A stretch of DNA of 64,000 nt, from the IMG/VR virus record IMGVR_UViG_3300023174_000046, positions 62,001 through 126,000 of that record. The stretch is one strand, 5' to 3'. This document shows, one piece after another, positions 1,483-47,207 of the stretch. The notes beneath the pieces were generated by a model. That model had not been told where the DNA came from and ran no database searches. It was given only the letters and a program-made list of their open reading frames with translations. Within the stretch, counting starts at the first letter, position 1. The number at the start of each line of letters is the position of its first letter. The position numbers and the translations under genes are program-made.

Positions 1483-1488
1483 GCTCTT

Positions 1489-1516: not shown

Positions 1517-1550
1517 CTCTCAACATACCAACTCTTTATATTACTGTATT

Positions 1551-1578
1551 ATTATAACCGAATTCCAAAAAAAATCAA
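1551..1578 (-). promoter_or_regulatory. Second, tandem sigma70-like promoter upstream of queD
   Basis: Minus strand AGTTGATT-N14-GTTATAATAA, same extended motif as 1489-1516 and 34225-34252. Confidence 0.65.
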
Positions 1579-1757: not shown

Positions 1758-1761
1758 ATCT

Positions 1762-2891: not shown

Positions 2892-2945
2892 CTTCTATAT
2901 TATTTATTATTGAAAATTTAAAACCTTAGGTTATATTATGTAAAT

Positions 2946-3596
2946 ATGTCTAAGAAAGTATTAATTCCATACGCAAATCATAACCATCCTCGCTCTGAAC
3001 AAGAGAAGAATGAGATTATTGATCATGCCGCAAAAGCTTATGAAGCTTATCTTGATGCGCTTTGTATTGATTGGCGCAATGATCCAAATAGCTCCAACAC
3101 ACCTCACCGAGTTGCAAAGGCCTTTGTTGAAGATCTAGCTTCTGGTTGCTACAGCACACCACCCAAAGTAACTGCATTTGCTAATGTGGATCAATATGAT
3201 GGCATTGTGTGTCAAAATAATATTAAAGTAACTTCACTTTGTTCACATCATCATGCAGCGTTCACTGGTGTAGCACATGTAGCATACATACCTTCTCGTG
3301 ATGGTAAGGTCATTGGCTTGAGCAAGCTCAATCGCATTGTAGATTGGTTTTCACGCAGACCACAAGTGCAGGAGAATCTCACCATGCAAATTCACCAGCA
3401 TATTGATCAAGCTTGTGAATTAAACAATGGTGTGGCAGTTATGATTGAGGCAAAGCATACTTGTTGTTCCAATCGTGGCATCAAGCATGACTCTACTATG
3501 CGCACTGCGCGCATGTCTGGTGCGTTCTTGGATAACAATGACAACTCTCGTTCTGAGTTTTACAAGTTTATTGAATTTGCACAAAATAGGGATTAA
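2946..3596 (+). CDS. folE: GTP cyclohydrolase I
   Basis: TPHRVAKA, SLCSHHHAAF, GLSKLNRIV, RRPQVQENLT, AKHTCCSNRG; promoter TTGAAA-N16-TATATT at 2910-2937. Confidence 0.96.
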   Translation: MSKKVLIPYANHNHPRSEQEKNEIIDHAAKAYEAYLDALCIDWRNDPNSSNTPHRVAKAFVEDLASGCYSTPPKVTAFANVDQYDGIVCQNNIKVTSLCSHHHAAFTGVAHVAYIPSRDGKVIGLSKLNRIVDWFSRRPQVQENLTMQIHQHIDQACELNNGVAVMIEAKHTCCSNRGIKHDSTMRTARMSGAFLDNNDNSRSEFYKFIEFAQNRD

Positions 3597-11735: not shown

Positions 11736-13195
11736 TAAAAATTGATTTTGATGGTAAAAAGAATAAGGCTATTCTCTCTGGTGATCATTTTGATGAAATA
11801 AGAGAAAATTTTTCTGTAAAAAATAAAGCCGCAGTTTTTTTAAAAAGATATGCCCGTTACATTCCGTCACGCACCTACAGTATTACTCCCACAGGAAGAT
11901 TTGATCCCTGTCTAACCCCGGAATTACAAAAGTTTTTTCTTGAAAAGCAGTATTCATGTTCTGTTGAAATTTCAGAGGATATTAAAAATATCATAACACC
12001 CGCTCTTTTTACATGGAAAAAAAATGCAAACTTCTCTGATACACCCTATAAACTAAAGCTCGATTTGCGCGATTATCAAGAAGAAATAGTTAAACAATGT
12101 CTTTCTTCTGGCAGAGGAACAGTAGTCCTTGCAACTGCAGGTGGGAAGACACTTGTAATGGCTTCATTAATATCATCTGTCTACCGCTTTAATAATAGCA
12201 AATTTAAATGTTTACTCATAGTACCAGATCGAGGCCTTGTAGAGCAAACATATAATGATTTTGTTCAATACGGTGTACCGTTCTCATTTTCAAAATGGAC
12301 AGGCGATAATAAGCTTGACTTGACTTCTAATATTATAATTGCAAATCTCGGCATTCTACAGAGTAAGAATTCAAATCTATCTTGGTTAGAGAATATTGAT
12401 ATGGTAGTAGTCGATGAAGTGCATAAGATTCGAAAAGGGAATGAAGTTAATAAACTTTTAGCATTAGCCAAAACAGCACATAAATTTGGATTTACAGGGA
12501 CTTTACCTGAGGAGAAAGAGGATCAGTGGAACATTATTGGTAAGATTGGACCAATATTGTATGAAAAGAATAGTTATGAACTACGAACTGAGAATTATGT
12601 AAGCAACGCGAATATACAGATGCTAAATGTTTTCTATAAAACTGTACCTAAGCGTGAAAGCAGCAATTTTAATCCCACAGATTTTTACAAGAAAGAGCTC
12701 GACTTTATTATTGAAAATAAATTCCGAAACGTATTATTATCAAAAATTGTTAATAAAGTTGAAAAAAACGTACTCATTTTAATTGATTTTATAAAGCATG
12801 GTGAAATACTTGAATCGGTTCTCAAGTTAAACTGCAACAATAAGAGGGTATTTTTTATTCGTGGCGAAGTAGAAGTCGAAGAAAGAGAGAAGATTAAAAA
12901 TATTATTGAAACTGATGATAATGTTGTTGTTATAGCTATTTCAAAAATATTTTCTACAGGTATTAATGTTAAGAATTTACACTACATTGTTTTTGCAGGC
13001 GGTGGCAAGGCGAAGATCAAGACTGTACAATCCATTGGTAGAGGTTTACGCTTGCATATCAACAAGGATAAGCTTATAATATTCGACATATCAGATCAAC
13101 TCTATTATGGTATACAACATACCAATAAAAGAAAACAAATTTATGAAAAAGAAAAAATCCAATACTACACCACCGACCTCCACGAAAAAGCCTAA
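11732..13195 (+). CDS. uvsW: SF2 DNA helicase UvsW
   Basis: LRDYQ, LATAGGKT, DEVH, GFTGT, FSTGIN, QSIGRGLR. Confidence 0.93.
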   Translation: MIKIDFDGKKNKAILSGDHFDEIRENFSVKNKAAVFLKRYARYIPSRTYSITPTGRFDPCLTPELQKFFLEKQYSCSVEISEDIKNIITPALFTWKKNANFSDTPYKLKLDLRDYQEEIVKQCLSSGRGTVVLATAGGKTLVMASLISSVYRFNNSKFKCLLIVPDRGLVEQTYNDFVQYGVPFSFSKWTGDNKLDLTSNIIIANLGILQSKNSNLSWLENIDMVVVDEVHKIRKGNEVNKLLALAKTAHKFGFTGTLPEEKEDQWNIIGKIGPILYEKNSYELRTENYVSNANIQMLNVFYKTVPKRESSNFNPTDFYKKELDFIIENKFRNVLLSKIVNKVEKNVLILIDFIKHGEILESVLKLNCNNKRVFFIRGEVEVEEREKIKNIIETDDNVVVIAISKIFSTGINVKNLHYIVFAGGGKAKIKTVQSIGRGLRLHINKDKLIIFDISDQLYYGIQHTNKRKQIYEKEKIQYYTTDLHEKA

Positions 13196-13646
13196 AAAAG
13201 ATAAACCTTTTTATGTTAGCCCGAAGGAATTCGAAGCTGAGATTACTATCTATTACAATACCGGTAACATGTCAATTAATCTTGGTGAATCCATTACTAA
13301 GATTGCAAATGGATTGAGCTACGCACCTAATTTTATTAATTATACATACAAAGACGATATGGTTGGCGATGCAATTGTGAAGATGTTTTCTGCATTAAAG
13401 AATAAGAAATTTAAACTAAATAGCGGGTTTAGTCCTTTTTCATATTTTACTACTATTGCTTTTCATGCATTTATTAATAGAATTAAAAAAGAAAAGAAAC
13501 ACCACGCTGCAATTAATGATTACAGAGAAAAAGTTTATACAGATTTAATTCATTCATGCCCCGGTGGTGAGCAAATTTACGTAAAGCCTTCAGACAGTAA
13601 TAATGAAGATGGTGAAAATGATGTCTTTAGTAATTTGAATGGTTAA
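13143..13646 (+). CDS. gp55: Late-transcription sigma factor gp55 (start likely MKKKK at 13143)
   Basis: YV..KEF, KIANGLSYAPNFINYTYKDDMVGDA, PFSYFTTIAFHAFINRIKKEKK. Confidence 0.92.
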   Translation: MKKKKSNTTPPTSTKKPKKDKPFYVSPKEFEAEITIYYNTGNMSINLGESITKIANGLSYAPNFINYTYKDDMVGDAIVKMFSALKNKKFKLNSGFSPFSYFTTIAFHAFINRIKKEKKHHAAINDYREKVYTDLIHSCPGGEQIYVKPSDSNNEDGENDVFSNLNG

Positions 13647-17410: not shown

Positions 17411-18628
17411 ATGGTTTCTCCCTTTGCTTCGCCCTTTGCATCACCTTTTGCACAACCCTTCCAAGCAGTACCAACAGGGCCCCAGGCTGCGCCACAGCAA
17501 ATGCCTTCTGTACCGCCTGAGGCAAATTTACCACGCGCAATAAATTACCTTGCAGATTATAGTGGTTGTGGTTTCTGGCGATTAATTTGGCCAGGGCACT
17601 TGCTTTGTGCACACCAAAAAGCTATTGTACATGCTTCTACAGTTATGTGCTTTGATCCACGCTGGTACGGTAACACACAAGCAATTCGCATTCAAAGACA
17701 AGCCACTGGACATCAAAGACAATTTTACGAGTTTCTTAAAAAACTTAGCGGTGAGATGGGATTTAGACTCATATACGAAATTGATGATATTATGTTTCAC
17801 GAAGATATTCCGGAATATAATAAGTTTAAACCTGCATTTAAGAATGATGAGATAAGAAACAATGCAATTGAAATGATGCGCATGTCAGATGAAATTACTG
17901 TTACATGTGATTTCATGAAAGAATATTATATGAATAAAACAGGCAACAAAAATGTTACTGTTATTCCGAATTACCCACCAAAATGGTGGATTGGGCACTT
18001 TTATAATGAAAAGAAAATAAGCCAAAATTATGATACACATCGCAAGCGTCCTCGTATTTTATACGCAGGCTCCGGTGCACACTTTGATGTTGAAAATAGA
18101 GTAAATCAAAATGATGACTTCCGTCACGTATTACAATCGATTGTTGATACACGACACAAATACCAGTGGGTATTTTTAGGAGCGTTTCCTCTCGCCTTAC
18201 AACAATTTGTTAAAGACGGTACATTTGAATACCATCCATGGGAATTACTCTATAGGTATCCAGAAAAAATTTATAACTTGAATATTAACATGATGGTTGC
18301 TCCTTTGCAGGATAATAACTTTAACAAAGCAAAGAGCGATCTCAAGTATATTGAGGCGTGTAGCTACGGCATACCCATTGCTTGTCAAGACCTTTGCACA
18401 TACGCGCAAGCGCCATTTAAATTCAAGACTGGTGAAGAAATGATTCAAAGAATTGAGGAAGTGTTAGAAAAGAAATCCAAATATATGACATACTGCCAGC
18501 ATGCAAGAGCATATGCTGAGACAAGATGGCTAGAAAATGAAGACAACATTAATACCTATCATGAATTGTATACGTTACCTTACGGGCACAAAGATAGAAA
18601 ATTGCTGAATAAAATTAATGGCTTGTAA
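17411..18628 (+). CDS. GT-B fold glycosyltransferase with N-terminal (SPFA)x3 repeat
   Basis: DYSGCGFWRL.WP, IYEIDD, VTVIPN, ILYAGS..H, APLQDNNFNKAKSDLKYIE; promoter TTGAAT-N16-TAATAT-N6-ATG. Confidence 0.85.
   Translation: MVSPFASPFASPFAQPFQAVPTGPQAAPQQMPSVPPEANLPRAINYLADYSGCGFWRLIWPGHLLCAHQKAIVHASTVMCFDPRWYGNTQAIRIQRQATGHQRQFYEFLKKLSGEMGFRLIYEIDDIMFHEDIPEYNKFKPAFKNDEIRNNAIEMMRMSDEITVTCDFMKEYYMNKTGNKNVTVIPNYPPKWWIGHFYNEKKISQNYDTHRKRPRILYAGSGAHFDVENRVNQNDDFRHVLQSIVDTRHKYQWVFLGAFPLALQQFVKDGTFEYHPWELLYRYPEKIYNLNINMMVAPLQDNNFNKAKSDLKYIEACSYGIPIACQDLCTYAQAPFKFKTGEEMIQRIEEVLEKKSKYMTYCQHARAYAETRWLENEDNINTYHELYTLPYGHKDRKLLNKINGL
17417..17461 (+). repeat. 12-bp coding tandem repeat (SPFA SPFA SPFA QPF)
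   Basis: tctccctttgct tcgccctttgca tcaccttttgca caacccttc. Confidence 0.85.
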
Positions 18629-23529: not shown

Positions 23530-24180
23530 ATGTGTGGTATATTTGGAGCTACAGATAAAGAAAGATTTAAATCTCTTTATAATTTAAATAAGCAGAGAGG
23601 TAATTTTTCTTTTGGTTGCTGCTTCTTAACACAAGATAGACGGTCTCAGTATTGTGAATCTGCACCTGGTGAAGTTAATCTTGATGATTTAATGAGCGAT
23701 AATTACTACTATCTTCTAGGTCATACACAGGCCCCTACTTCATCAGCTCGTGGGTATGATAGAGCCACTTCACATCCTTTTGTGGATGGTGATTGGGTTG
23801 TTGCACATAACGGTGTATTATCTAATTTTGAAATCTTAAAGCAAAAATATGTACCAGAGCACGCAAACCCTGTCGATAGTAGCATCATACCAGTGCTCTT
23901 AAGCTATATGCAGGAAGATGATGAGGTACAGACAATTAAAAATGTATTAGAAGCTATTGAGGGAACTTATAGTTTGTGGCTCTTCAATCATGTTAGTAAA
24001 AATATCTATGTTGTACGGTGCGGTAGTACACTCTATGGTGATATTATTAAATGTGAGTTCTCATCATACCCAGATATTGGCTTGAGTGAACTTGATGATA
24101 ATGCTCTTTATTTGGTTACACAAGAGGGGTTAACAAAGGTCTCAGGATTTGATGGCAACAGCCCGTTTTTTATTATATGA
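23530..24180 (+). CDS. Stand-alone class II (Ntn) glutamine amidotransferase
   Basis: MCGIFG N-terminal nucleophile, RG, GHTQAPT, HPF, AHNGVL.NF, VDS. Confidence 0.88.
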   Translation: MCGIFGATDKERFKSLYNLNKQRGNFSFGCCFLTQDRRSQYCESAPGEVNLDDLMSDNYYYLLGHTQAPTSSARGYDRATSHPFVDGDWVVAHNGVLSNFEILKQKYVPEHANPVDSSIIPVLLSYMQEDDEVQTIKNVLEAIEGTYSLWLFNHVSKNIYVVRCGSTLYGDIIKCEFSSYPDIGLSELDDNALYLVTQEGLTKVSGFDGNSPFFII

Positions 24181-24851
24181 ATATTTGTATTTTTAGCTGT
24201 ACTACTAAGAGCGATGAGACACAGACAGATCTATATAAGAGTTGTTTAGAATTTGAGCATCTAGATGTGTATTTTAAGAAGGAAAACGCAGATGGGTTAT
24301 CTAAATCGTATAATAATTTTTTATATAGTAAGGAGGCTAGCGAATATGATATTGTTGTTTTTTGCCATGATGATGTTTTTATCGATGATCTTAAGCTAAA
24401 AAACAAATTACAAGCTGCAACTGACCTTGGTTACGATATTATAGGTCTTGCTGGCTGTGTTAATCCGAAAATTATAAGACCTGCACTATGGCATCTTATG
24501 GCAGGCGGATTTAATAGCAATAATTTAAGAGGAATTGTAAATCACTATCAGGATGAAACACGCGCGCATCATTTTGCAACAAATTTTGGACCTACACCTT
24601 CGCGGGTTGCATTATTAGATGGTCTTTTTCTTGCTGTTAACGTTGGAAAGGCAAAAGAGGTTGGATGGGGCTTTAATGAAAACTACAATTTTCATCACTA
24701 TGATATTGCCTCTTGTCTAGACGCAAATAATAAAAAATTAAAATTAGGCGTTTACCCTATAAATGTTATTCACTGCTCGCACGGGCTCCGATCTTTTGAT
24801 GACAACTTTAAGAATAGTGAAGATGCCTTTATGCGAGAATATTCTCGTTGA
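24177..24851 (+). CDS. GT-A fold glycosyltransferase-like protein
   Basis: GLSKSYN, VVFCHDDV (DxD-like), IIGLAG, LDGLFLA, FHHYD, H.S.G. Confidence 0.8.
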   Translation: MNICIFSCTTKSDETQTDLYKSCLEFEHLDVYFKKENADGLSKSYNNFLYSKEASEYDIVVFCHDDVFIDDLKLKNKLQAATDLGYDIIGLAGCVNPKIIRPALWHLMAGGFNSNNLRGIVNHYQDETRAHHFATNFGPTPSRVALLDGLFLAVNVGKAKEVGWGFNENYNFHHYDIASCLDANNKKLKLGVYPINVIHCSHGLRSFDDNFKNSEDAFMREYSR

Positions 24852-24881: not shown

Positions 24882-26216
24882 ATGCAAGACCGTGCTTTAG
24901 ATTTGGATTTCTTTGAGCATGTTGTTTTATATAAATCGCTTACTGACGAAAAATTTTTAGGCTCGATTGTAGATATTGTTAAGCCAGCTTTCTTTAAAGA
25001 CAAGAATATTAAGAGTATTTTTAGTATTATTAAAGAATTTTATATTAAAAATACCACAGTACCTACCTTAACTGAAATTAAGGCTTACTTGAGCACTGAT
25101 AAGCTTAAAGAAAGCTTCAAAGAATCAATTTCGAAATTTAAAGATATTGACAAAAACTTTAATGAAGAAGAACTTTACCGCAATACAGAAAGATTTTTAA
25201 GAGAAAAAGCTGTTTATACAACAATGCTTGAAGTTGCAGATAAATGCTCAAAAGGTGAGATCAATACTGCAGAAATTTTGGAAAAGTTTGATAGTTCTTG
25301 CAGTATTAATCTGTCAGTAGATCTTGGTATAGAGATACTTTCAAACTCACAGCTCATTGTTGATGATTTAAATAAAGTTGAAAGCTTTATTTCTACTGGG
25401 TACCCTTGGATTGATCAACGTATAGGTGGAGGCTTGCAAGAAAACGGCAGGTCTTTGTATGTTTTTGCAGGTGAAACAAATATTGGCAAGTCAATTTTTC
25501 TCGCTAACGTCGCTACTAATATTGCAAAACAAAATAAAACGGTTTTATTGATTTCACTAGAAATGCCTGAATTGATATATGCAAAACGACTTTCGTCTAA
25601 TATTACAAAAATTCCAATCTTTAGATTAAAGGGTGAACAGGATCAGCTCAAGATTGGCTTGGATGAATTTAATAGAAAAAACCCTAATGCCCGGATTTAT
25701 GTAAAAGAGTTTCCACCATCGACTATTTCACCCTTACAACTAAATGCATTTATTAAGAAGTTTATTGCAAAAGGAATAAAAGTAGATGCAATTGTATTAG
25801 ATTATCTCAATCTCATACACTCTCCTACAGGGACCAATTCATATGAAAGGGTAAAATATGTTACTGAAAAGATTCGAGCTTTGTCTTATATTTTTAATTG
25901 TCCTATTATTTCAGCAACACAATTAAATCGCTCTGGTTATAGTGAATCAGACCCATCTATAGCCACAATTAGTGAAAGCATTGGTTTAGCTGCGACTGCA
26001 GATGTTGTCATGAGTATTTTTCAGACAGATGAAGAAAGAGAGCTGGGAGTTATTCACTTAGGTATGATGAAAAATCGCTTTGGACCAAATTTTGGAAACG
26101 TTTTATTGAGAATAGATTACCCCACATTAACAATTTCACAAGATGATACTATAAATGATACTGACGAAAGCAATTCGTTGACGTCAACCCTCAAAGTATT
26201 AGCAGATAACAATTGA
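24882..26216 (+). CDS. gp41: Replicative DnaB-like helicase
   Basis: AGETNIGKS, SLEM, DYLNL, SATQLNRSG, SESIGLAATAD, KNRFG; promoter TTGATT-N16-TATTAT-N6-ATG. Confidence 0.95.
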   Translation: MQDRALDLDFFEHVVLYKSLTDEKFLGSIVDIVKPAFFKDKNIKSIFSIIKEFYIKNTTVPTLTEIKAYLSTDKLKESFKESISKFKDIDKNFNEEELYRNTERFLREKAVYTTMLEVADKCSKGEINTAEILEKFDSSCSINLSVDLGIEILSNSQLIVDDLNKVESFISTGYPWIDQRIGGGLQENGRSLYVFAGETNIGKSIFLANVATNIAKQNKTVLLISLEMPELIYAKRLSSNITKIPIFRLKGEQDQLKIGLDEFNRKNPNARIYVKEFPPSTISPLQLNAFIKKFIAKGIKVDAIVLDYLNLIHSPTGTNSYERVKYVTEKIRALSYIFNCPIISATQLNRSGYSESDPSIATISESIGLAATADVVMSIFQTDEERELGVIHLGMMKNRFGPNFGNVLLRIDYPTLTISQDDTINDTDESNSLTSTLKVLADNN

Positions 26217-26247
26217 TTATCAATAGATTTTCCTAAATACTTATAGA

Positions 26248-27132
26248 ATGCAGGGAAAATACTGTTTTGTGGTGCCATCAAATATTGAGGCAGCCGCTTG
26301 TGTATTGTCATTTTTATGGCTTACCAAGAAAGAGGATATTACCACAATTGTGTCTTCAGAAAATAATTTACAAAAAGATCTCGAAAAAATAAAATTAGAT
26401 TCTTTTAAGTTTGTTTATATTGTTGGTTTTTATGATTTTAAAAACTTTAACCATGCATATGATCGCAAGAATGTTTACATTATTAATAAGAAAATTACCA
26501 ACATGCCTAGTTTCAATGAAGCACACATCATTACAGACGGTGATACAACTCTTGATTTATTAATAAATTTACTTCAAAAACATACTGAAAACAAATTTAG
26601 CAATAACCAAGAAATCTTCTTAGATAATATTAAAAAATACTTAACTTTTACGTTTGATAACGATCTTATACCGTTAAAGTTGTTTTATTACTTTAAAACA
26701 CAACCCGATATGAATAAGGTTGATGCGTTTATACGTAAATTTAATTCCGGTTTAATTTTATTCAGTGAAACAGAAAACTACAAAATAAACTTACTACTTA
26801 AAGAGTTAGCTATAACACTTAAATCGCTAAAACTATTCAAAGGTACTTTAAATCACAACAATAAAACCTTATCTGTAGTTTCTACTTTTAGTGCTAAATT
26901 TAAAAATGAAGTTGCACACAAGATTCTCAAGAAAGGTTTTAACATCTCTCTTGTATTGGATCTTGAAAAGAAAACAGCACATTTCCGAAAAAGTAAAGGG
27001 ATTGACATTGACTTAGGAGATTATGTGCATAAATGTTTTTCAGGCTATGGAACAGAATATGCAGCATTTTGTAAGCTCAACGAACAAATTATTGACTTAA
27101 CTAAGAACTTCTTCCCACTAAATGAACATTAA
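26248..27132 (+). CDS. Degenerate DHH/DHHA1-family phosphoesterase-like protein
   Basis: C-terminal DHHA1-like HFRKSK..DIDLG.Y...FSGYG.EYAA; catalytic DxD, DHH and GGGH motifs replaced. Confidence 0.6.
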   Translation: MQGKYCFVVPSNIEAAACVLSFLWLTKKEDITTIVSSENNLQKDLEKIKLDSFKFVYIVGFYDFKNFNHAYDRKNVYIINKKITNMPSFNEAHIITDGDTTLDLLINLLQKHTENKFSNNQEIFLDNIKKYLTFTFDNDLIPLKLFYYFKTQPDMNKVDAFIRKFNSGLILFSETENYKINLLLKELAITLKSLKLFKGTLNHNNKTLSVVSTFSAKFKNEVAHKILKKGFNISLVLDLEKKTAHFRKSKGIDIDLGDYVHKCFSGYGTEYAAFCKLNEQIIDLTKNFFPLNEH

Positions 27133-27409
27133 AGAACTCAATCCTTCCTTTAAAATGGTTGAGTCAGAAACAATGCATAACTTCCTATCTTTTTGCACCT
27201 TTATATACCTTATCAATGGAAAAAAGCTTAATCTTGCTAATATTTTTCTATTATGCCTAAAAAACGAAAACATCAAAAAGCTCTATAAAAGAATTTTAGA
27301 AGTGGATAATGATTTTTATGCATTTAAAATGTTCTTTGAATTTGATCCAACCCTGTACAAGAGTAAATATATAATGAAATTTTTAAGTAAGGATAAATGT
27401 GAGAAATAA
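27122..27409 (+). CDS. Hypothetical protein (95 aa)
   Basis: Overlaps both neighbours within the operon. Confidence 0.65.
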   Translation: MNIKELNPSFKMVESETMHNFLSFCTFIYLINGKKLNLANIFLLCLKNENIKKLYKRILEVDNDFYAFKMFFEFDPTLYKSKYIMKFLSKDKCEK

Positions 27410-27602
27410 TGCTGAAGTAAAACTAGAGCTGAAGAAATCTTCTAATAAAGAATATTTTGACAAAAAGCTAAATGCATTTTCAAAATTAGTCAAGAGAAGC
27501 GGCATACTCGAAGACTTGAAGTGGAAGAAGTGCGCCTACAAACCATCAATGCTTAAGAAATTAAAGAAAAAGAATGCACACTTGAAGTGGAAGTTCTATT
27601 GA
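27399..27602 (+). CDS. rpsU: Phage-encoded 30S ribosomal protein bS21 homolog
   Basis: EYFDKKLNAFSKLVKRSGILEDLK....YKPS..KKLKKK aligns by eye to bS21 E.FD.ALRRFKR...KAG.L.E...R.FYEKP...RK.K; 67 aa, basic. Confidence 0.8.
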   Translation: MRNNAEVKLELKKSSNKEYFDKKLNAFSKLVKRSGILEDLKWKKCAYKPSMLKKLKKKNAHLKWKFY

Positions 27603-28234
27603 TGTTAAGCGATTTCGAAAAATTCATTTATAATAAACATTTAAGCTGCACGAAGAGGGTACAAAATAAGCCCTACACTCTTCGTAAAGACTTCTCCAAT
27701 GTTGATAATTCTACCGCTTTTTATCTTAAAAAGTTGGGTCTTTTTTTTAATAAATTTAAACAAATAGAGATAGATGATTTTTTTAACGCCCCGTTCAAGC
27801 TGTATAAAGATGAAAATTATTTTGACTTAAAATATTACATCTCACCGAAAGCAGTTAACACATATAACATATATAAAAAACAAAAAGAGACGCAGGATCC
27901 CGATACTACTGAAATTCTCAAACACACATTATCCTCACTAAAATTTATAAAAGATTATTGCTGTCAGCATAATATACAAATAAAAGATTACTTAAACTTT
28001 ACTGAAGACAATAATACTTTACCTGCATTTATAGGACATCTTCAAGCACACAGTATTAATTTTTACTCACTAATGGGGTTCAGCAATTTTATGAAGAAAT
28101 TAACACAAAATTTTGAAACCCATAAATTTGTTCTCGGAAGCGTTCTCGACAATATAAATGAAATTTATGGCAATTTTGTGCGGTCGAAAAAACTAAAAGT
28201 TTTAGTAAGAGAAGGTATAAAGAAAATCGCTTGA
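27602..28234 (+). CDS. gp59: Helicase loader gp59-like protein
   Basis: ~210 aa immediately upstream of gp32 as in T4; AFIGHLQAHSINFYSL resembles T4 gp59 YIFKLLQSNIISFETF. Confidence 0.6.
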   Translation: MLSDFEKFIYNKHLSCTKRVQNKPYTLRKDFSNVDNSTAFYLKKLGLFFNKFKQIEIDDFFNAPFKLYKDENYFDLKYYISPKAVNTYNIYKKQKETQDPDTTEILKHTLSSLKFIKDYCCQHNIQIKDYLNFTEDNNTLPAFIGHLQAHSINFYSLMGFSNFMKKLTQNFETHKFVLGSVLDNINEIYGNFVRSKKLKVLVREGIKKIA

Positions 28235-28266
28235 TATATTTTAAGCTTCCTATATTATATTTAAAT

Positions 28267-29115
28267 ATGAATGACATCACCAAATCAATGTTTGAAAGCA
28301 TTAAAACCGCATTAGTCCGTCAAGATAGTAACAATTCCTCTTATCGAGATATTCTTAGAATGGAAGCCGATAAGACATATGTTGTACGCTTGCTTCCTAA
28401 TATTAAGGATCCTGCTAAAACGTTTTTCCACTTTTATCAACATGCTTTCAATAGCTTTGCATCAGGTAAGTTTATGTCAGTTGTTTCACCTTCTTCTTTT
28501 GGTGAAAGAGATCCCATCTCTGAGCTCAAGTATAAACTACTACGCACAGGCTCAGAAGAAGATAAGAAGAAAGCAAGCTCTTTGGTATGGTCTGAGCGCT
28601 GGCTTGTTAATGCATATATTGTTGATGACCCTACTAATCCTGATAATAACGGGAAAGTTAAGATTGTTCAGTTCGGTAAGCAATTACATAAAATTATTAT
28701 GCGCGCTATTGATGGTGATGATGCTGATGATCTAGGTGCAAAAGTCTTTTCCTTAAAAGCAGATGGTGTTAATCTCAAGATTACCTGTGAAACACAGGGC
28801 GGGTATAAGACGTATACTTCTTCGAAGTTTTCGATGCCAAGAGCTATTGATGGTGTTACTGATAAGAACATCGATGAAATCCTCGGCGGTATCCATGATC
28901 TCGAGAAAATTAACCCTGTTAAGACATACGATGAACTTAAGAAGATTCTTGATGAGCATTTTCTCTGTGTAGAATCAACTGATAATGATACACAGGAAGC
29001 TGTAACCAAGCCAGTTGAAAGACAACCTGTGGTAGCAGCTGCAGCTACTTCAAAACCATCAACAGCTGTTGATGACGATGAAGTAAAGAGACTGCTTGAC
29101 GGTTTAGATGAATAA
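28267..29115 (+). CDS. gp32: Single-stranded DNA-binding protein (real start 28267)
   Basis: VVRLLP, H.F, DP.SE, N.YIVDDPTNPDNNGKVK...FGK, G.NLK, Y..SKF, acidic tail; promoter TTGATA-N16-TATTAT. Confidence 0.92.
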   Translation: MNDITKSMFESIKTALVRQDSNNSSYRDILRMEADKTYVVRLLPNIKDPAKTFFHFYQHAFNSFASGKFMSVVSPSSFGERDPISELKYKLLRTGSEEDKKKASSLVWSERWLVNAYIVDDPTNPDNNGKVKIVQFGKQLHKIIMRAIDGDDADDLGAKVFSLKADGVNLKITCETQGGYKTYTSSKFSMPRAIDGVTDKNIDEILGGIHDLEKINPVKTYDELKKILDEHFLCVESTDNDTQEAVTKPVERQPVVAAAATSKPSTAVDDDEVKRLLDGLDE

Positions 29116-29548
29116 AACACAACAAGAAGAATATCAAGAGAAAGTAGATTTGCTTAAGTTTTTTGGAGCTGTAAAAGGCTCTTTAAACGAAATCAATACT
29201 AAAGTTATTGATGGCAGTAATCTGCGACCTGCAAATTTTGATATTCAAAAACTTGCTTTAGAACACGACAAAGCAACAGGTGCACCTGTCGCGGCAGGTG
29301 CTAACCAGCAGATATCACATCAACAACTGCCTAATGCTGATTTTGTTCCTCTACAATACCCTGTATTAACGACTGATCAATCCCACCAACAAGAAGACCC
29401 AAATCAACTGGCACTACCTTTTGATAAAAAGTATGACCTAAATGATATTTTTTCAAAAATAGACGATGTTTATAGAAAAATAATAACTCTTGAAAATGAA
29501 GTATATAAATTAAGAGAGTTAGTTGAAAATAAAAAAAAAGAACTATAA
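29108..29548 (+). CDS. Hypothetical protein with C-terminal coiled coil
   Basis: ORF overlapping the gp32 stop. Confidence 0.65.
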   Translation: MNKTQQEEYQEKVDLLKFFGAVKGSLNEINTKVIDGSNLRPANFDIQKLALEHDKATGAPVAAGANQQISHQQLPNADFVPLQYPVLTTDQSHQQEDPNQLALPFDKKYDLNDIFSKIDDVYRKIITLENEVYKLRELVENKKKEL

Positions 29549-29557
29549 TATACCAAG

Positions 29558-30298
29558 ATGGTTCTCAAGATTCATAACCTAAAAAACTTTAATAACGGGT
29601 TTTTAAACAACATATCTAAATTAACAGATAGTTGTATTTTAAGATTCGAAAAAAATGACGCATCATGTATTGCAAGCAATAACGACAACACTGTCGTCTA
29701 TTATAGTTCTACTAATCAAGATGATTCGTTTATAAGTGACAATCTTATCACACTCAATATACCTGATGTAAAGAAGCTAATAAAAATATTTTCTTGTATT
29801 GAAGAAAACAGCATTCAACTTAATATTGAAAATAATAATATATCTTTTGCAAACAACTATTTCAAATTTAAATACCACCTTTTAGAGGATGGTATTGTTG
29901 TTGTACCGAAGATAAACATCTCGAAGATATTTGCTTTGCAATTTAATACCATATTTAAAATTAGAAAGAATGAATTGCAGAATATTCTCAAAGCTAGCAC
30001 TATTGCATTAGATGTTACTAAGCTTTATCTTTACAGTGATGATAATGGCATATTCTGTGATTTTACTGATAATAATAGACATAATGTTGATAGTATTGCG
30101 CTAAAGATTACAGATGCGTTTGAAGGTGATAAAATTAAGCAACCTGTACCAATTAATTTTGAAATCGTGAGGTTGATATCTTCTTCAAAATCTAACGAAC
30201 TAAACATAAGATACAATAATAGTCTCGGTGTATTTCTTTTTGATCTTGAAGAATCTGGATACACCTGTAAGTATATTGTATCAGCACTTGTAAATTAA
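29558..30298 (+). CDS. gp45: Sliding clamp (gp45/PCNA-like)
   Basis: 246 aa, two-domain clamp-like alternation, LNIPDVKKL, ends YIVSAL; replication context. Confidence 0.72.
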   Translation: MVLKIHNLKNFNNGFLNNISKLTDSCILRFEKNDASCIASNNDNTVVYYSSTNQDDSFISDNLITLNIPDVKKLIKIFSCIEENSIQLNIENNNISFANNYFKFKYHLLEDGIVVVPKINISKIFALQFNTIFKIRKNELQNILKASTIALDVTKLYLYSDDNGIFCDFTDNNRHNVDSIALKITDAFEGDKIKQPVPINFEIVRLISSSKSNELNIRYNNSLGVFLFDLEESGYTCKYIVSALVN

Positions 30299-30302
30299 AA
30301 TT

Positions 30303-30671
30303 ATGAAATTAGCTAAAAATAAAATTCGTACAGCTGGTTATTTTATTAAGAGATTAAGAGATAACGGCTTTATTGTTCTGAAGATGTTCTTTAGATATGG
30401 CAAACATGATCCACGCCGCTGGACATTGTTAGTTGACCCTAGCGGTGCATCTGTCTTTATTACTTGCTATGAGAATAAGGATTTTATGGATGAAATTATG
30501 TTTGAATTTAATGATGGTGGTGTTAAATTTCCTAAGAATTATAGCATCAAAACAGATTCCCTGGAGGTTATCATACAACATCTTATTACAAATGGTGTTT
30601 GCAATAACTATCCCAACAGTTTATACCTAAAGAAACCAATAAATATTATTAATGAAAAAGAGGAAGGATAA
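30303..30671 (+). CDS. Conserved hypothetical protein
   Basis: YFIKRLRDNGF...DPRRWT.LVDP. Confidence 0.65.
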   Translation: MKLAKNKIRTAGYFIKRLRDNGFIVLKMFFRYGKHDPRRWTLLVDPSGASVFITCYENKDFMDEIMFEFNDGGVKFPKNYSIKTDSLEVIIQHLITNGVCNNYPNSLYLKKPINIINEKEEG

Positions 30672-31008
30672 TTCTAATCCGGGTGATGATGGTGAGAATA
30701 TGAAGAAGAAGAAAGAAGACAATCTCAAGCAATCACAGGAATTAGATAAAATTCTTAAGACTGCTCTTAATAACTATTTGATGTCGCAAGCATCAGAGGT
30801 TAAGAGCAAGACTCGCGATATTGATGCACTGAGAGCAACCATAGAAGAGTTTTTAAACAGCTATATTCTCCTGGGGTACTCACCGGTAGGTGAACCGGTG
30901 CATGTTATTTCAGCTCACAATCAACAAGAAGCAGATTCACTTTCTGCTTTACTAAATAAATTTCTTTTGAATCAAAGCGATAGGCCCGAAAAAGATTTTC
31001 CCTTTTAA
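30652..31008 (+). CDS. Hypothetical late protein
   Basis: TAAATA-N6-ATG embedded in the upstream gene. Confidence 0.6.
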   Translation: MKKRKDNSNPGDDGENMKKKKEDNLKQSQELDKILKTALNNYLMSQASEVKSKTRDIDALRATIEEFLNSYILLGYSPVGEPVHVISAHNQQEADSLSALLNKFLLNQSDRPEKDFPF

Positions 31009-31019
31009 ATTCTAAAACA

Positions 31020-31877
31020 ATGATTGTTATTCTTGGTGGCGGATTTGTCGGTAAGCATCTATATAATTTTTTACAAGATAAATATTTTAACGTAAAGCTC
31101 GTAACTAAATCTGAAGTAGATTATTCTGATGAAAAGGTTTTAACTGATTTCTTTTTTAGTTGCAAGCCACGTTTTGTTATTAATTGTTCTGGTTATACCG
31201 GTTACCCTAACGTTGATGGTTGTGAAGCAAATAAAGAAGATTGTTTATTCTACAATGTACAAGCACCACTCAACGTATGCAATGTATGTTCAAAGCTTAA
31301 TATTAAAGTTATACACATTTCTTCAGGCTGTATATACAGCGGCTATGAAAAATACTTTACAGAAGAAGATGTACCTAACTTCGGTATTTTTAATAGTGAG
31401 TCGAGCTTTTATTCAAAAACAAAGCATTTGTTCGAAGTTGCATGTGCCCCATTTAAAGACAATACTGCTATATTACGTGTACGGATGCCTTTTACAAATA
31501 CAATAGATCGCAAGAATTATCTCTATAAATTATACAAATATAACAATCTTATTAGCCTTAAAAACAGTGTGACATATCTTGAGGATTTAAATCGGTTTAT
31601 TTTTACACTGTGTCAAGGTAATAATTTTAAAGGCGGTATATACAATGTAGTCAGCTCAGAGCCCATACTTGCAACTGATGTTGTCTCTATTTTTAAAAGC
31701 AATGGAATCGAGAATACTGAATGGCGCTATGTGGATTTAAACGAACTTGATATCAAAGCTAATCGATCAAACTGTCTTCTTTCTAATGACAAGATAACCA
31801 ACCTTGGGTTTACCTTTCCAAATGCGCATGATGTTATTGATAAGTGCGTTAAAGATATCAAGCAGCTAATTGTATGA
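31020..31877 (+). CDS. NDP-4-keto-6-deoxyglucose 3,5-epimerase/4-reductase (RmlD-like, NRS/ER type; NDP-rhamnose synthesis)
   Basis: ILGGGFVG Rossmann fold, GYTGYPNVDGCE, SSGCIY, EED.PNF, FYSKTK, LRVRMP. Confidence 0.85.
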   Translation: MIVILGGGFVGKHLYNFLQDKYFNVKLVTKSEVDYSDEKVLTDFFFSCKPRFVINCSGYTGYPNVDGCEANKEDCLFYNVQAPLNVCNVCSKLNIKVIHISSGCIYSGYEKYFTEEDVPNFGIFNSESSFYSKTKHLFEVACAPFKDNTAILRVRMPFTNTIDRKNYLYKLYKYNNLISLKNSVTYLEDLNRFIFTLCQGNNFKGGIYNVVSSEPILATDVVSIFKSNGIENTEWRYVDLNELDIKANRSNCLLSNDKITNLGFTFPNAHDVIDKCVKDIKQLIV

Positions 31878-32158
31878 ATATTGTAAAGCACGTTAAGAAA
31901 CTATTTAAACGTTATAATCCCGGTTCCATACTTGCATATAAAAAGGGTCTTTACACAGGTAAGATGATTGCATTAATTTGTATCAATAAGAGTGACAAGA
32001 CCTTTTTTTTATTACCAGATATGCTGCCGTATAATATTACAAATAGTGATTTTAACTATTTACTTGCTACAGATGAACTTGAATATATAGAAGAACTGCC
32101 AGTTGATGTTTTTGACGTAATAAAAGCTCAGTATTTAAAAAACATCCACGCGGTGTAA
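31874..32158 (+). CDS. Hypothetical protein
   Basis: ATGA overlap with the upstream gene. Confidence 0.6.
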   Translation: MNIVKHVKKLFKRYNPGSILAYKKGLYTGKMIALICINKSDKTFFLLPDMLPYNITNSDFNYLLATDELEYIEELPVDVFDVIKAQYLKNIHAV

Positions 32159-33855: not shown

Positions 33856-33865
33856 TAAATATTTA
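33856..33865. promoter_or_regulatory. Palindromic bidirectional late promoter TAAATATTTA
   Basis: Perfect 10-bp palindrome in the 19-bp gap between divergent genes. Confidence 0.7.
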
Positions 33866-33866
33866 T

Positions 33867-34235
33867 ATGATCTCGTTCAAAAAAATGTGTGAAGATGCAC
33901 AAATGTATTCTGCTGATAGGTACGTTGCAGGTATAGCCTCCAGGGATCTCAAGTCAAATCCTGTTAGTTTAGCGGATCTATATGGTAGACAAGAGCAATA
34001 CCCCAACAAGCAGAATGTTGCGCGTGTTACCCCTTCTGAATTAACAAACATCATAGATCAACTCGGTCAATTGTATTTGGTATGCGAGAACTTGTTTGCA
34101 AAATATAATCTTGCGTTGAACAACCCAACAATAAAGAATAAAGCGCTTTTAAAATTAGCTTTGCTTATTGTTCGGAAGATGTATGATGCGACTAAAAAAT
34201 TAGCATTTATAACAAGAAAAGTAGTTGATAGTTAA
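33867..34235 (+). CDS. Hypothetical late protein
   Basis: MISFKKMCE; TAAATA-N5-ATG. Confidence 0.65.
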   Translation: MISFKKMCEDAQMYSADRYVAGIASRDLKSNPVSLADLYGRQEQYPNKQNVARVTPSELTNIIDQLGQLYLVCENLFAKYNLALNNPTIKNKALLKLALLIVRKMYDATKKLAFITRKVVDS

Positions 34236-36474: not shown

Positions 36475-37410
36475 TTAGAGATTGAATGCTGATTTACCAG
36501 CAACGATCTTTGAGTTAACAACGTTTGCTTTGCCTTTTACTGAGGTAGGAGCACCACCGCTAACACCGCCACCTACTAGTGCATGGCCTTTTTCACCATC
36601 GTTACCAACTTTATCGGTGTACTTACCGTCACCACCCTTACCAGCTTTCTTACCAGCTGTTGATACTTCACTTGGAACGACATTGGAACCGGATGAAACC
36701 TTGTTCAAGCCTTTGGCAAGCTTCTCTGAATCAACCACTGCGTGGCCAATATCTTCTGCATCAACTGCTTCACCAGCAACTTCCTTATCGTCTTCTTTCT
36801 TATCTTCTTGTTGCTCTTGACCGACTTCTAAATTATCTTCTGAAGCACCTTCTTCACCGGCACCTTCTTCATCGCCACCCTCTTCAGAAGGGCACTTTTC
36901 ATGAGCGAGTTGAAGAAGCTCTAATGCCTTAGCGATAAGATCTTTTGAGCTCATCTCGGCTTCGGATTTTTCACCTTCACCGCCGGTATTAATATCGAGC
37001 TCTTGTGCGTCGAGAGTCTCGAGATCTTGTGGTTGGCCTTGGCCACCCATTACATCTTCGTAAAGTTTGTCAAAAATAGATTTATTGTTCATAAAATTAT
37101 TTATATTCTCTTTTACCTTTTTTTGCACATTATTTGAAAATTTTTCTGGCTCAAAGTGATTTTCTTTACCTTTATTGATCTTGGGATCAACAACATTCTT
37201 GTTAATTCCATTGGCGCTCTCTGGGCCTGAGTCTTTTTGGAAGAAAGGTTGCTCTGGCTGACCATCATCTTTGAGTGGTTCTTTAATGCTTACAGTAGGA
37301 ATTGCTTGCAGTGGCTTGCCTGGCTTGGTGCCAAATTTTGCTTTGGGGTCAGACATTTTTGCAGACTCATAGAGAGCTGATAAATCTAATAGATCGCGAA
37401 CTTTATTCAT
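36475..37410 (-). CDS. Low-complexity acidic/Gly-Lys-rich late protein (putative prohead core or internal head protein)
   Basis: LSALYE N-terminal motif, second internal MNNKSIFDKLYE motif, own late promoter and terminator. Confidence 0.6.
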   Translation of the reverse strand: MNKVRDLLDLSALYESAKMSDPKAKFGTKPGKPLQAIPTVSIKEPLKDDGQPEQPFFQKDSGPESANGINKNVVDPKINKGKENHFEPEKFSNNVQKKVKENINNFMNNKSIFDKLYEDVMGGQGQPQDLETLDAQELDINTGGEGEKSEAEMSSKDLIAKALELLQLAHEKCPSEEGGDEEGAGEEGASEDNLEVGQEQQEDKKEDDKEVAGEAVDAEDIGHAVVDSEKLAKGLNKVSSGSNVVPSEVSTAGKKAGKGGDGKYTDKVGNDGEKGHALVGGGVSGGAPTSVKGKANVVNSKIVAGKSAFNL

Positions 37411-37411
37411 A

Positions 37412-37421
37412 TAAGTATTTA
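37412..37421. promoter_or_regulatory. Overlapping bidirectional late promoter TAAGTATTTA
   Basis: 15-bp gap between divergent ATGs: TAAATA-N5-ATG on minus, TAAGTA-N8-ATG on plus. Confidence 0.65.
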
Positions 37422-42080: not shown

Positions 42081-42095
42081 CGAATAAATAATTTT

Positions 42096-42641
42096 ATGGC
42101 AGACGTAAATCAACTCATATCAGACTTTTACAGAGTCGCGCAAGAAAGAGATTTCGCACGCGATTTTCAATTCAGAGTACTATCAATCAATGCAGGTGAT
42201 TCCGGTGTAACATTCGATAATAGTGATCTTGTATACATCCGCACTGCAACATTACCTGAAAGAGCAATTACTAACAAACAAGTACCTTACATGGGTCTTA
42301 ATTTCAACGTTCCAGGAAATGCTACATACCCAAACAGTGAAGCATATCAAGTAGAATTTTATGCTGATGCACAATCACAGCTTCGTCAAAAATTCGAAGA
42401 TTGGTCAAGAAGCACATTTGATGATGCTAATAGCACAGGCAATTACTTTACACCAAAACAAAATTCAACAATTGATCTAGTACAATTAGATTCAAAACTT
42501 GTTAAAGTTGCACAATATCAACTAGTTGGTGTATCAGTTCGTAATGTTGGTCCTCTTACCTATAACATTGCTGATGGTACCGGTGAAATTCTAAGATTTA
42601 CTGCTACATTAGCATATCATTATTGGAAGAGAGTATCGTAA
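42096..42641 (+). CDS. gp19: Tail tube protein
   Basis: Follows sheath; AR..QF.V, TATLP, VPYMG..PG, LRQKFEDW, QLD, F.ATLAY.YW. Confidence 0.88.
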   Translation: MADVNQLISDFYRVAQERDFARDFQFRVLSINAGDSGVTFDNSDLVYIRTATLPERAITNKQVPYMGLNFNVPGNATYPNSEAYQVEFYADAQSQLRQKFEDWSRSTFDDANSTGNYFTPKQNSTIDLVQLDSKLVKVAQYQLVGVSVRNVGPLTYNIADGTGEILRFTATLAYHYWKRVS

Positions 42642-47187: not shown

Positions 47188-47207
47188 TTGCTTGATTAAA
47201 TAATATT

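What the first reader, a model, noticed from the sequence alone, without database searches (positions are those of the whole stretch)
27399..27602. Divergent phage bS21 inside the replication operon, a candidate ribosome-retuning factor for leaderless mRNAs
Seen: a 67-aa bS21-like ORF overlapping its neighbours between gp41 and gp59-gp32, in the slot T4 uses for gp33. The usual RRF and REFYEKP residues are replaced (NAF, KKCAYKP), and the tail is short, ending KWKFY. Established: bS21 sits by the anti-SD/mRNA exit channel and affects initiation, and phage-encoded bS21 genes are known. Inference: together with the leaderless promoter layout, this variant may displace host bS21 to mask the anti-SD and bias ribosomes towards phage mRNAs. 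I have not seen this pairing described, but could not check the literature.
Basis: partly seen in the sequence, partly recalled or inferred. Interest (0 to 1): 0.75.

Follow-up and report, generated by a model that had tools for sequence, protein, structure and literature searches.

The report
Divergent phage ribosomal protein S21 gene
A lake-water T4-like phage carries a real, well-conserved but unusually divergent copy of ribosomal protein bS21 inside its replication operon; phage bS21 genes are already known, and here the gene is an optional extra that does not track the phage's striking 'leaderless' gene layout.

Summary
The ORF at 27399-27602 (+) is real. It encodes a 67-aa, very basic protein that is a divergent homologue of ribosomal protein bS21. 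It scores below the curated Pfam and NCBIfam cut-offs by itself, but its family profile hits only bS21 chains in the PDB, and hhalign, Foldseek (AFDB) and ESM Atlas agree. It belongs to a small, apparently phage-only clade with an invariant C-terminal K-W. It is under strong purifying selection (dN/dS 0.03-0.11).

The genome is a 217-kb uncultivated freshwater T4-like phage. There is no Shine-Dalgarno signal, and T4-type late (TAAATA) and sigma70-type early promoters end 5-8 nt before start codons.

The proposed link between the two is not supported. Sister phages of the same clade lack S21 yet have the same layout. Pelagiphage HTVC008M has S21 yet uses SD. S21 is an accessory insertion between a conserved 95-aa ORF (the true occupant of T4's gene-33 position) and a gp59-like gene, and it has been gained or lost at least four times.

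Most likely it enters host 30S subunits at the bS21 site. Which mRNAs it favours is unknown. It is a new variant of a known kind, of moderate interest.

The parts
27399..27602 (+). Gene for a divergent bS21 homologue (67 aa, pI 10.2, 21 K+R). GTG start. Predicted helices at residues 17-34, 36-45 and 49-62. Residues invariant across the family: K17, F20, F27, P49, S50, K63, W64.
27388..27393 (+). SD-like TAAGGA, 5 nt before the GTG start. It lies inside the coding end of the upstream ORF. It is shared only with the closest relatives, so it is not a conserved element.
27122..27409 (+). Conserved 95-aa ORF of unknown function. It is found in all 100 related loci and sits directly upstream of the gp59-like gene wherever S21 is absent. 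It holds the position that gene 33 has in T4, but shows no sequence similarity to gp33.
27602..28234 (+). gp59-like helicase loader candidate. Its ATG overlaps the S21 stop codon (TGATG).
   Evidence: Foldseek top hit T4 gp59 1C1K, probability 1.00, E 0.014, TM 0.35; sequence comparisons not significant
28231..29115 (+). gp32 single-stranded DNA binding protein.
24882..26216 (+). gp41-type DnaB-like replicative helicase.
26234..26239 (+). TAAATA late-promoter-like motif, 8 nt before the ATG of ORF 26248-27132. It is the nearest upstream promoter-like site for the run ORF294-ORF95-S21-gp59-like-gp32.
13107..13646 (+). gp55-type late sigma factor. Its presence supports reading TAAATA as the late promoter core.
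   Evidence: phrog_234, E 1e-24
42085..42098 (+). Example of the leaderless-type layout: TAAATA, 5 nt, then the ATG of the tail tube gene (42096-42641).

Best explanation
The ORF is a functional phage gene for a divergent bS21 homologue. It belongs to a small clade that looks phage-only and has an invariant K-W near the C-terminus.

It is an accessory gene of the moron type. It is inserted between a conserved 95-aa ORF and the gp59-like loader gene in the replication operon of an uncultivated freshwater T4-like phage (217 kb).

Shown: it lies inside a tightly packed run of genes and overlaps both neighbours. Inferred: it is made from a polycistronic mRNA by translational coupling, not from a leaderless mRNA of its own.

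Inferred mechanism, from homology and from the published behaviour of pelagiphage bS21: the protein enters host 30S subunits at the exchangeable bS21 site on the platform, beside the 3' end of 16S rRNA. There it supplements or replaces host bS21 and so maintains or biases translation initiation during infection.

Which mRNAs it favours is unknown. The data here argue against a specific tie to the phage's leaderless, SD-free gene layout.
For: Homology to bS21.

A real, selected gene:
- dN/dS is 0.03-0.11, with synonymous sites saturated.
- The slot is the same in 42 loci whose gp41 is as low as 55-60% identical.
- It diverges at a rate like gp32 and gp59-like.

Small clade: an exhaustive HMM search of 1.84 billion representatives gives only 6 clusters at E<1e-10, then a gap to ordinary S21 at E about 1e-4.

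Accessory and mobile:
- The gp41+gp32 tree needs at least 4 gains or losses. Sister pairs L066/L071 (with S21) and L088/L091 (without) separate with 100/100 support.
- One relative (L010) has the gene in another slot.

Operon-internal: it overlaps both neighbours. 124 of 230 same-strand neighbour pairs in the genome overlap or lie within 10 nt.

Transcription: metatranscriptome contigs of about 90-95% identical relatives span the S21 3' part and the junction into the next gene in two runs.

Precedent: HTVC008M bS21 enters E. coli 70S ribosomes and changes their activity. bS21 is one of the loosely bound, exchangeable ribosomal proteins (PMC6375957).
Against: - The window protein is under the curated cut-offs of Pfam (24.1 against 27) and NCBIfam S21p (16.7 against 28.95).
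- The R-R-F and E-x-Y-E residues of cellular bS21 are replaced.
- Foldseek against solved structures found nothing, and the AFDB matches have E 0.6-4.
- No ribosome-binding data exist for this clade.
- The host is unknown.
- Repeated loss shows the gene is dispensable.
- The RNA evidence comes from assembled contigs of relatives and does not exclude DNA carry-over.
Confidence: 0.6

Rival explanations
1. The variant displaces host bS21, masks or repositions the anti-SD, and so shifts ribosomes from SD-led host mRNAs to the phage's leaderless and SD-free mRNAs. In effect this would be selective host shut-off.
For: - The phage is SD-free. Early and late promoters stand at leaderless distance, so anti-SD masking would cost it nothing.
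- bS21 does sequester the anti-SD in Bacteroidia (PMC7797042).
- Ribosomes carrying HTVC008M bS21 translated an ordinary reporter at about 5% of control in vitro (PMC6375957).
- HTVC008M also has 10 genes with TAAATA-N5-start.
- An invariant Trp and C-terminal aromatic residues could stack on rRNA bases.
Against: - S21-less members of the same clade have the same or a stronger leaderless layout and no SD.
- HTVC008M has S21 but uses SD in about 46% of crude gene starts, like T4.
- In E. coli, loss of bS21, not its gain, favours leaderless mRNA (PMC10491246).
- Extrapolating the HMM coordinates, F. johnsoniae Tyr54 falls on position 62 (Leu here). The tail is Lys-rich, unlike the less basic Bacteroidia tail.
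- Early promoters are TTGACx-N16/17-TATAAT, so the host is probably not a Bacteroidota member.
Confidence: 0.13
2. An exapted small basic RNA-binding protein that no longer works on the ribosome. It might be, for example, a translational regulator or RNA chaperone for the replication-operon mRNAs next to which it is encoded.
For: - It diverges strongly from all cellular bS21 (nearest at E about 1e-4) and scores under both curated cut-offs.
- It has a conserved clade-specific signature (K-W, Y-F-D).
- Its fixed position in front of gp59-like and gp32 recalls T4, where translation of the replication genes is regulated at the mRNA level (own knowledge).
Against: - The hydrophobic core, the K-P-S motif, the length and the basic tail of bS21 are kept.
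- One relative has the gene in a different, non-replication slot, so function is not tied to these neighbours.
- Other phage bS21 proteins do bind ribosomes.
Confidence: 0.15
3. A plain supply gene. It tops up bS21 so that 30S subunits stay complete while host gene expression collapses, with no change in mRNA choice.
For: - bS21 is added late in 30S assembly and exchanges readily (PMC7797042; PMC6375957).
- The gene is optional in the clade, as auxiliary genes usually are.
Against: A simple substitute would be expected to stay close to the host protein, as in HTVC008M (54% identical to its host's). This clade has no close cellular relative.
Confidence: 0.2
4. A chance ORF, or a mis-annotated overlap region.
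For: It is short, has a GTG start, overlaps both neighbours, and scores under the curated HMM cut-offs.
Against: - It is conserved in 42 loci with dN/dS 0.03-0.11.
- The start position is consistent across ATG, GTG and TTG variants.
- Several independent homology methods agree.
Confidence: 0.01

Closest known systems
bS21 of Pelagibacter myophage HTVC008M (Mizuno et al. 2019, PMC6375957)
   Same: A ribosomal protein S21 homologue encoded by an aquatic T4-like myophage. It is under purifying selection and is proposed to replace host bS21.
   Different: The HTVC008M protein is 54% identical to its host's bS21 and is not part of a specific gene cluster (PMC7029224). The protein here has no close cellular relative and sits in a fixed slot of the replication operon. 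HTVC008M uses SD widely and this phage does not. tblastn of this protein against 50,697 phage records found nothing.
bS21 of freshwater phages predicted to infect Bacteroidetes (Chen et al. 2022, PMC9723584)
   Same: A freshwater, phage-encoded bS21 with a clade-specific conserved C-terminus. The phages have few or no SD sequences. The published hypothesis is substitution into host ribosomes to favour phage transcripts.
   Different: Those genes lie on the reverse strand among capsid and terminase genes. They resemble Flavobacteriia bS21 and keep an aromatic residue at Tyr54. This one lies among replication genes, is far from any cellular bS21, has Leu at the extrapolated position, and belongs to a phage with sigma70-type TTGACx/TATAAT early promoters.
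Cellular bS21 of Flavobacterium johnsoniae (anti-SD sequestration; PMC7797042, PMC9976891)
   Same: The same protein family.
   Different: The match of the family profile to the F. johnsoniae chain is weak (E 0.057). The signature Tyr54 and the less basic tail are not reproduced. The conserved strong SD upstream of rpsU is not reproduced either: SD-like pairing at or below -5 kcal/mol occurs upstream of 23% of S21 genes here.
Short cellular bS21 of the Lactococcus/Firmicutes type (PDB 5myj chain AU)
   Same: The best solved-structure match (E 3e-5). The alignment covers residues 17-65 against 9-57 of 58, with the same tail length, the K-P-S motif and a basic C-terminus.
   Different: An eight-residue longer N-terminal part. 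R-R-F is replaced by N-A-F and E-H-Y-E by C-A-Y-K. An invariant Trp lies near the end.

Membership tests
Ribosomal protein bS21 (Pfam PF01165, NCBIfam TIGR00030) | The single sequence scores over the curated family cut-off. | tested here: not met
   Pfam 24.1 bits against 27. TIGR00030 16.7 bits against 28.95. One clade member passes (L023, 31.3 bits). Several relatives carry a precomputed PF01165 hit.
Ribosomal protein bS21 (Pfam PF01165, NCBIfam TIGR00030) | Profile-level homology to bS21 and to nothing else. | tested here: met
   All 9 close relatives hit PF01165. The family profile hits 27 bS21 chains in the PDB, best E 3e-5, and the only other hit has E 1. hhalign gives 96.5%. 99 of 100 Atlas neighbours are S21.
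Ribosomal protein bS21 (Pfam PF01165, NCBIfam TIGR00030) | Small (about 55-75 aa), very basic, helical protein with a K-P-S/T motif and a basic tail. | tested here: met
   67 aa, pI 10.2, 21 K+R. P49 and S50 are invariant and K48 nearly so. Three predicted helices.
Ribosomal protein bS21 (Pfam PF01165, NCBIfam TIGR00030) | The fold matches bS21. | tested here: inconclusive
   All 30 best AFDB Swiss-Prot matches are bS21, with TM 0.47-0.63 but E 0.6-4. Foldseek against the PDB found no match. The protein is short and helical and takes its final shape only on rRNA.
Ribosomal protein bS21 (Pfam PF01165, NCBIfam TIGR00030) | It is a component of the 30S subunit at the platform beside the 16S 3' end. 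| not testable with these tools
   This needs ribosome purification or cryo-EM from infected or expressing cells.
Bacteroidia-type anti-SD-sequestering bS21 | A signature aromatic residue at Tyr54 (F. johnsoniae numbering) and a less basic C-terminal part. | tested here: not met
   By the HMM coordinates (query 18-59 against chain 10-51), Tyr54 falls on position 62. That position is Leu here and mostly N, L or F in the family. The tail is Lys-rich. This is an extrapolation without a direct alignment of the tails. An invariant Trp lies two residues further on.
Bacteroidia-type anti-SD-sequestering bS21 | The host is a Bacteroidota member, and the S21 gene carries a conserved strong SD for autoregulation. 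| tested here: not met
   Early promoters are TTGACx-N16/17-TATAAT, which by inference is not the Bacteroidota type. SD-like pairing at or below -5 kcal/mol occurs upstream of 23% of distinct S21 genes, against 0-9% for neighbouring genes. It is not conserved.
   T4's order is dsbA-33-59-segG-32. In all 100 related loci the conserved 95-aa ORF holds that place. S21 is present after it in only 42.

The most novel reading that the evidence does not exclude
A whole clade of aquatic T4-like phages expresses early and late genes from leaderless, SD-free mRNAs. Within it, a phage-evolved bS21 variant (invariant K-W tail) acts as an optional ribosome-specialising factor. It would reshape the platform and anti-SD region so that ribosomes favour 5'-terminal or SD-less starts over host SD-led mRNAs. 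S21-less relatives would then do without it, or use another factor.
Probability: 0.12. Interest if true: 0.75.

Novelty: new variant of a known kind. Interest (0 to 1): 0.4.

Why it matters
Phage-encoded bS21 is the commonest ribosomal protein gene in viruses, yet its function has never been shown. This clade offers a natural experiment. Closely related phages with and without the gene share the same slot and the same unusual expression layout, which has no SD and has promoters abutting start codons. Comparing such pairs, or testing the protein on SD-led, SD-less and leaderless reporters, could show what a viral bS21 really does. The leaderless layout of a T4-like clade is itself worth a 5'-end mapping study. 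For the claim as made, that S21 is paired with leaderless mRNAs, the result is mainly negative.

Tried and rejected
- **Foldseek against solved structures:** the S21 model gave no match.
- **tblastn of S21 against 50,697 phage records:** no match.
- **Host identification failed.**
  - There are no tRNAs in the window, and the 16 tRNAs elsewhere in the genome are not diagnostic.
  - The genome has no WhiB or psbA.
  - A gp32-profile scan of 185,579 species genomes found nothing.
  - Atlas neighbours of a sugar epimerase are viral.
  - The nearest cultured phages are only 27-31% identical in gp32 and gp41.
- **ORF95 as gp33:** no PDB, Pfam, PHROG or hhalign support.
- **gp59-like by sequence:** not significant. 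Only the fold search supports the label.
- **A conserved SD upstream of S21, as in Flavobacteriia rpsU:** only a weak enrichment, confounded by the coding sequence of the upstream ORF.
- **The generic sigma70 scan of the region:** no better than shuffles. The informative signal came from a stricter custom scan.
- **RNA runs:** none holds this phage itself. Only assembled contigs of relatives could be laid, so there is no 5'-end information.
- **Complex prediction:** not run. Without rRNA and without the host's proteins a null result would mean nothing.

Full report
**The observation**

The window holds an ORF at 27399-27602 on the + strand, with a GTG start, encoding 67 aa. It overlaps the preceding 95-aa ORF (27122-27409) by 11 nt. 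Its TGA shares a base with the ATG at 27602 of the next gene.

The protein has pI 10.2, with 21 Lys+Arg against 6 acidic residues.

By itself it matches the following families:

| Library | Family | Score |
|---|---|---|
| Pfam | Ribosomal_S21 | E 3e-5, 24.1 bits (cut-off 27) |
| PHROGs | ribosomal protein S21 | E 0.0018 |
| NCBIfam | S21p | 16.7 bits (cut-off 28.95) |

So it falls below every curated threshold when taken alone.

**Is it a bS21 homologue?**

- A word-indexed search of 5.8 billion proteins found 8 relatives of 60-94% identity. A source names two of them ribosomal protein S21.
- All nine family members hit PF01165, best E 3.6e-8.
- A profile of the nine hits 27 bS21 chains in the PDB, best E 3e-5 for Lactococcus bS21. 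The only other hit has E 1.
- hhalign of a 30-member family alignment against a canonical-looking S21 gives probability 96.5%.
- An AlphaFold2 model (pLDDT 80.7, three helices) found nothing in the PDB by Foldseek. Against AFDB Swiss-Prot the 30 best matches are all bS21, with TM 0.47-0.63, although E is only 0.6-4.
- 99 of 100 nearest ESM Atlas clusters are S21 clusters, and those shown are viral.

I take homology to bS21 as established and equivalence of function as not established.

The 'short tail' holds only against the 71-aa E. coli protein. Against the 58-aa Lactococcus protein the alignment runs to both ends, and the phage protein is instead about eight residues longer at the N-terminus.

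**How wide is the family?**

An exhaustive HMM search of 1.84 billion cluster representatives gave six clusters at E<1e-10. After that there is a gap to ordinary S21 proteins at E about 1e-4.

The family alignment has these invariant residues: K17, F20, F27, P49, S50, K63 and W64. Most members end K-W-K-F-Y.

No close cellular relative was seen, so the donor lineage cannot be named.

**The genome**

The window is bases 62001-126000 of a 217,413-bp IMG/VR virus record rated complete. It comes from lake-water metagenomes.

It is T4-like. It encodes the following:

- UvsY, a UvsW-type helicase, the gp55 late sigma factor, gp47/gp46, the gp43 polymerase and UvsX.
- gp41 and gp32.
- Tail sheath and tail tube proteins.

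Cultured phages are at most 27-31% identical in gp32 and gp41. The genome carries 16 tRNA genes.

**Is the gene real, and how is it placed?**

S21-based and gp32-based scans of IMG/VR gave 100 related loci. At least 423 relatives of this gp32 exist.

The order gp41 - (ORF294) - ORF95 - [S21] - gp59-like - gp32 - (ORF146) - ORF246 - ORF122 is kept throughout. S21 is present in 42 loci. In 41 of them it lies between ORF95 and the gp59-like gene; the exception is L010, described under "The gene is accessory". In the other 58 loci ORF95 is followed directly by the gp59-like gene.

S21 diverges at about the rate of its neighbours: 44-52% identity where gp41 is 55-60% and gp32 46-50%. dN/dS is 0.03-0.11, with synonymous sites saturated.

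**The gene is accessory**

A gp41+gp32 tree needs at least four gains or losses of S21. L066/L071 (with S21) and L088/L091 (without) are sisters with full support.

One relative, L010, carries the same family of gene in a different slot, between homologues of genome genes at 164-165.6 kb.

Seven long S21-negative contigs (64-105 kb held) have no S21 anywhere. Positive controls ring at E 1e-30 or better.

The gene is therefore a selected but optional and mobile insertion.

**The neighbours**

*The gp59-like gene.* The 210-aa protein has no significant sequence match to T4 gp59. Its model (pLDDT 90.5) has T4 gp59 (1C1K) as its top Foldseek hit over the full length, with probability 1.00, E 0.014 and TM 0.35. 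The label is reasonable.

*ORF95.* T4's order is dsbA-33-59-segG-32. So the place of gene 33 is held here by ORF95, not by S21. ORF95 shows no similarity to gp33, and its function is open.

**The leaderless layout**

I used a crude longest-ORF gene caller throughout and checked it on control phages.

| Phage | S21 | Starts with an SD core at -20..-4 | G at -11..-8 | TAAATA spacing before the start |
|---|---|---|---|---|
| This genome (G000) | yes | 8.5% of 295 | no peak | 5 nt in 33 genes, 6 nt in 14 |
| T4 | no | 43% | clear peak | 9-24 nt |
| HTVC008M | yes | 46% | clear peak | 5 nt in 10 genes |
| S-CRM01 (cyanophage) | no | 16% | – | mostly 18-24 nt |

TAAATA is the core of the T4-type late promoter, and its 5-6 nt spacing is a sharp peak. 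The tail tube gene has the 5-nt spacing; the tail sheath gene has TAAATA 8 nt before its ATG.

Given the known geometry of T4 late promoters (TATAAATA at about -13 to -6; own knowledge), a 5-nt spacer puts the transcription start on the A of the start codon.

In the early region (genome 197-217 kb and 0-3 kb), canonical TTGACx-N16/17-TATAAT promoters are followed by ATG 6-8 nt after the -10 box in 17 of 59 hits. That includes nearly all the best ones.

There are no 5'-end data.

The promoter type argues, by inference, against a Bacteroidota host. The host remains unknown.

**Is S21 tied to this layout?**

It is not, as far as sequence can tell.

- In the replication module, 11.6% of gene starts in S21+ loci and 11.4% in S21- loci have TAAATA 4-8 nt upstream. 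SD-like cores stand at 7.1% and 9.4%.
- Over whole contigs, TAAATA-N5-ATG occurs at 0.166 per kb in six S21+ contigs and 0.129 per kb in seven S21- contigs. The reversed-pattern control is about 0.03 per kb.
- Two S21- contigs analysed gene by gene have the motif at 5-6 nt in 16 of 83 genes (G005) and 21 of 67 genes (G006). SD cores stand at 5-10%.
- Conversely, HTVC008M has S21 but uses SD as much as T4 does, although it also has ten genes with the 5-nt spacing.

The S21 gene itself is operon-internal, not leaderless. The nearest promoter-like site is a TAAATA at 26234-26239, 8 nt before ORF294.

More than half of the same-strand neighbour pairs in the genome overlap or lie within 10 nt. This fits translational coupling for internal genes.

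**Literature**

- Phage bS21 is the commonest virus-encoded ribosomal protein and is almost wholly aquatic. The HTVC008M protein enters E. coli ribosomes, and such ribosomes translated a reporter at about 5% of control (PMC6375957).
- Chen et al. proposed that phage bS21 substitutes into Bacteroidetes ribosomes to favour late phage transcripts. They noted a conserved aromatic residue at Tyr54 (PMC9723584).
- In F. johnsoniae, bS21 with bS18 and bS6 sequesters the anti-SD, and rpsU carries a strong SD (PMC7797042; PMC9976891).
- In E. coli, ribosomes lacking uS2 and bS21 handle leaderless lambda cI mRNA better (PMC10491246).
- I found no paper linking phage bS21 to leaderless mRNAs, and none on leaderless late genes in T4-like phages.

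**Checks of the Bacteroidia-type mechanism**

- Extrapolating the HMM coordinates, Tyr54 falls on position 62, which is Leu here. An invariant Trp lies two residues on, and the tail is Lys-rich rather than less basic.
- The window gene has TAAGGA 5 nt before its GTG. However, SD-like pairing at or below -5 kcal/mol is found upstream of only 23% of distinct S21 genes, against 0-9% for neighbouring genes. That stretch also encodes the Lys/Glu-rich end of ORF95.

**Expression**

No RNA run holds this phage itself. In two lake metatranscriptomes, assembled contigs of about 90-95% identical relatives cover 27478-27669 and 27537-27680, which is the S21 3' part and the junction into the next gene. 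gp32 is covered in all four runs laid. This fits co-transcription but does not exclude DNA carry-over.

**Conclusion**

The finding is a genuine, divergent, phage-specific bS21 homologue under purifying selection. It is an optional insertion in the replication operon of an uncultivated freshwater T4-like phage.

The most likely mode of action is entry into the exchangeable bS21 site of host 30S subunits. This rests on homology and precedent, not on data for this protein.

The attractive idea that it retunes ribosomes for leaderless mRNAs is not excluded mechanistically. However, it gains no support from co-occurrence, from the E. coli data or from the Bacteroidia signature residues.

The clade-wide SD-free, leaderless-type layout is the more unusual observation and deserves its own test.

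Noticed in passing
whole genome G000; in the window e.g. 42085-42098, 47197-47210, 33856-33869, 37408-37421 (-): There is no Shine-Dalgarno signal anywhere: 8.5% of crude gene starts have an SD core, against 43% in T4. The T4-type late promoter core TAAATA ends exactly 5 nt (33 genes) or 6 nt (14 genes) before start codons. This predicts leaderless late mRNAs. In T4 and in cyanophage S-CRM01 the same motif lies 9-24 nt upstream. No paper on this was found.
   Followed up: partly
G000 genome coordinates 197000-217413 and 1-3500 (outside the window): Canonical TTGACx-N16/17-TATAAT promoters are followed by ATG 6-8 nt after the -10 box, often as ATGATG. This occurs in 17 of 59 hits. It predicts leaderless early mRNAs and a host with an ordinary sigma70, not the Bacteroidota promoter type.
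   Followed up: partly
window 27122-27409: A 95-aa ORF is conserved in all 100 related loci, with an invariant S-K-Y-I motif near its C-terminus. It sits where T4 has gene 33 but shows no detectable similarity to gp33 or to any known family.
   Followed up: partly
L010:1416-1619: A related phage contig carries the same S21 family gene in a different slot, between homologues of G000 genes at 164085-165161 and 165172-165616. The gene has therefore moved within the clade.
   Followed up: partly
window 27388-27393: TAAGGA lies 5 nt before the S21 start codon in a genome that otherwise lacks SD sequences. This is reminiscent of the SD on rpsU in Flavobacteriia. It is shared only with the closest relatives, and similar cores occur in about a quarter of the family.
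   Followed up: yes
L105-L112 (Pelagibacter phage HTVC008M, KC465899): HTVC008M, which also encodes bS21, uses SD widely. Yet it has ten genes with TAAATA exactly 5 nt before the start codon, which suggests some leaderless late genes there too.
   Followed up: no
window 29558-30298 and 30303-30671: Two ORFs conserved across the clade lie downstream of gp32, of 246 aa and 122 aa. The 246-aa one has only a faint Hus1 match (E 0.007) and could be the sliding clamp. Neither was identified.
   Followed up: no
G000 genome coordinates 25059-32095, 175844-175935 and 190587-190839 (outside the window): There are sixteen tRNA genes, mostly in two clusters. Two are unusually long predictions: Ile-tat at 95 nt and Leu-taa at 92 nt.
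   Followed up: no
window 17411-18628, 23530-24851, 31020-31877: Sugar-modifying genes lie among the replication genes: a glycosyltransferase, a glutamine-amidotransferase-like ORF with a second transferase-like ORF, and an RmlD/epimerase-family protein. They may serve DNA or surface glycan modification.
   Followed up: no
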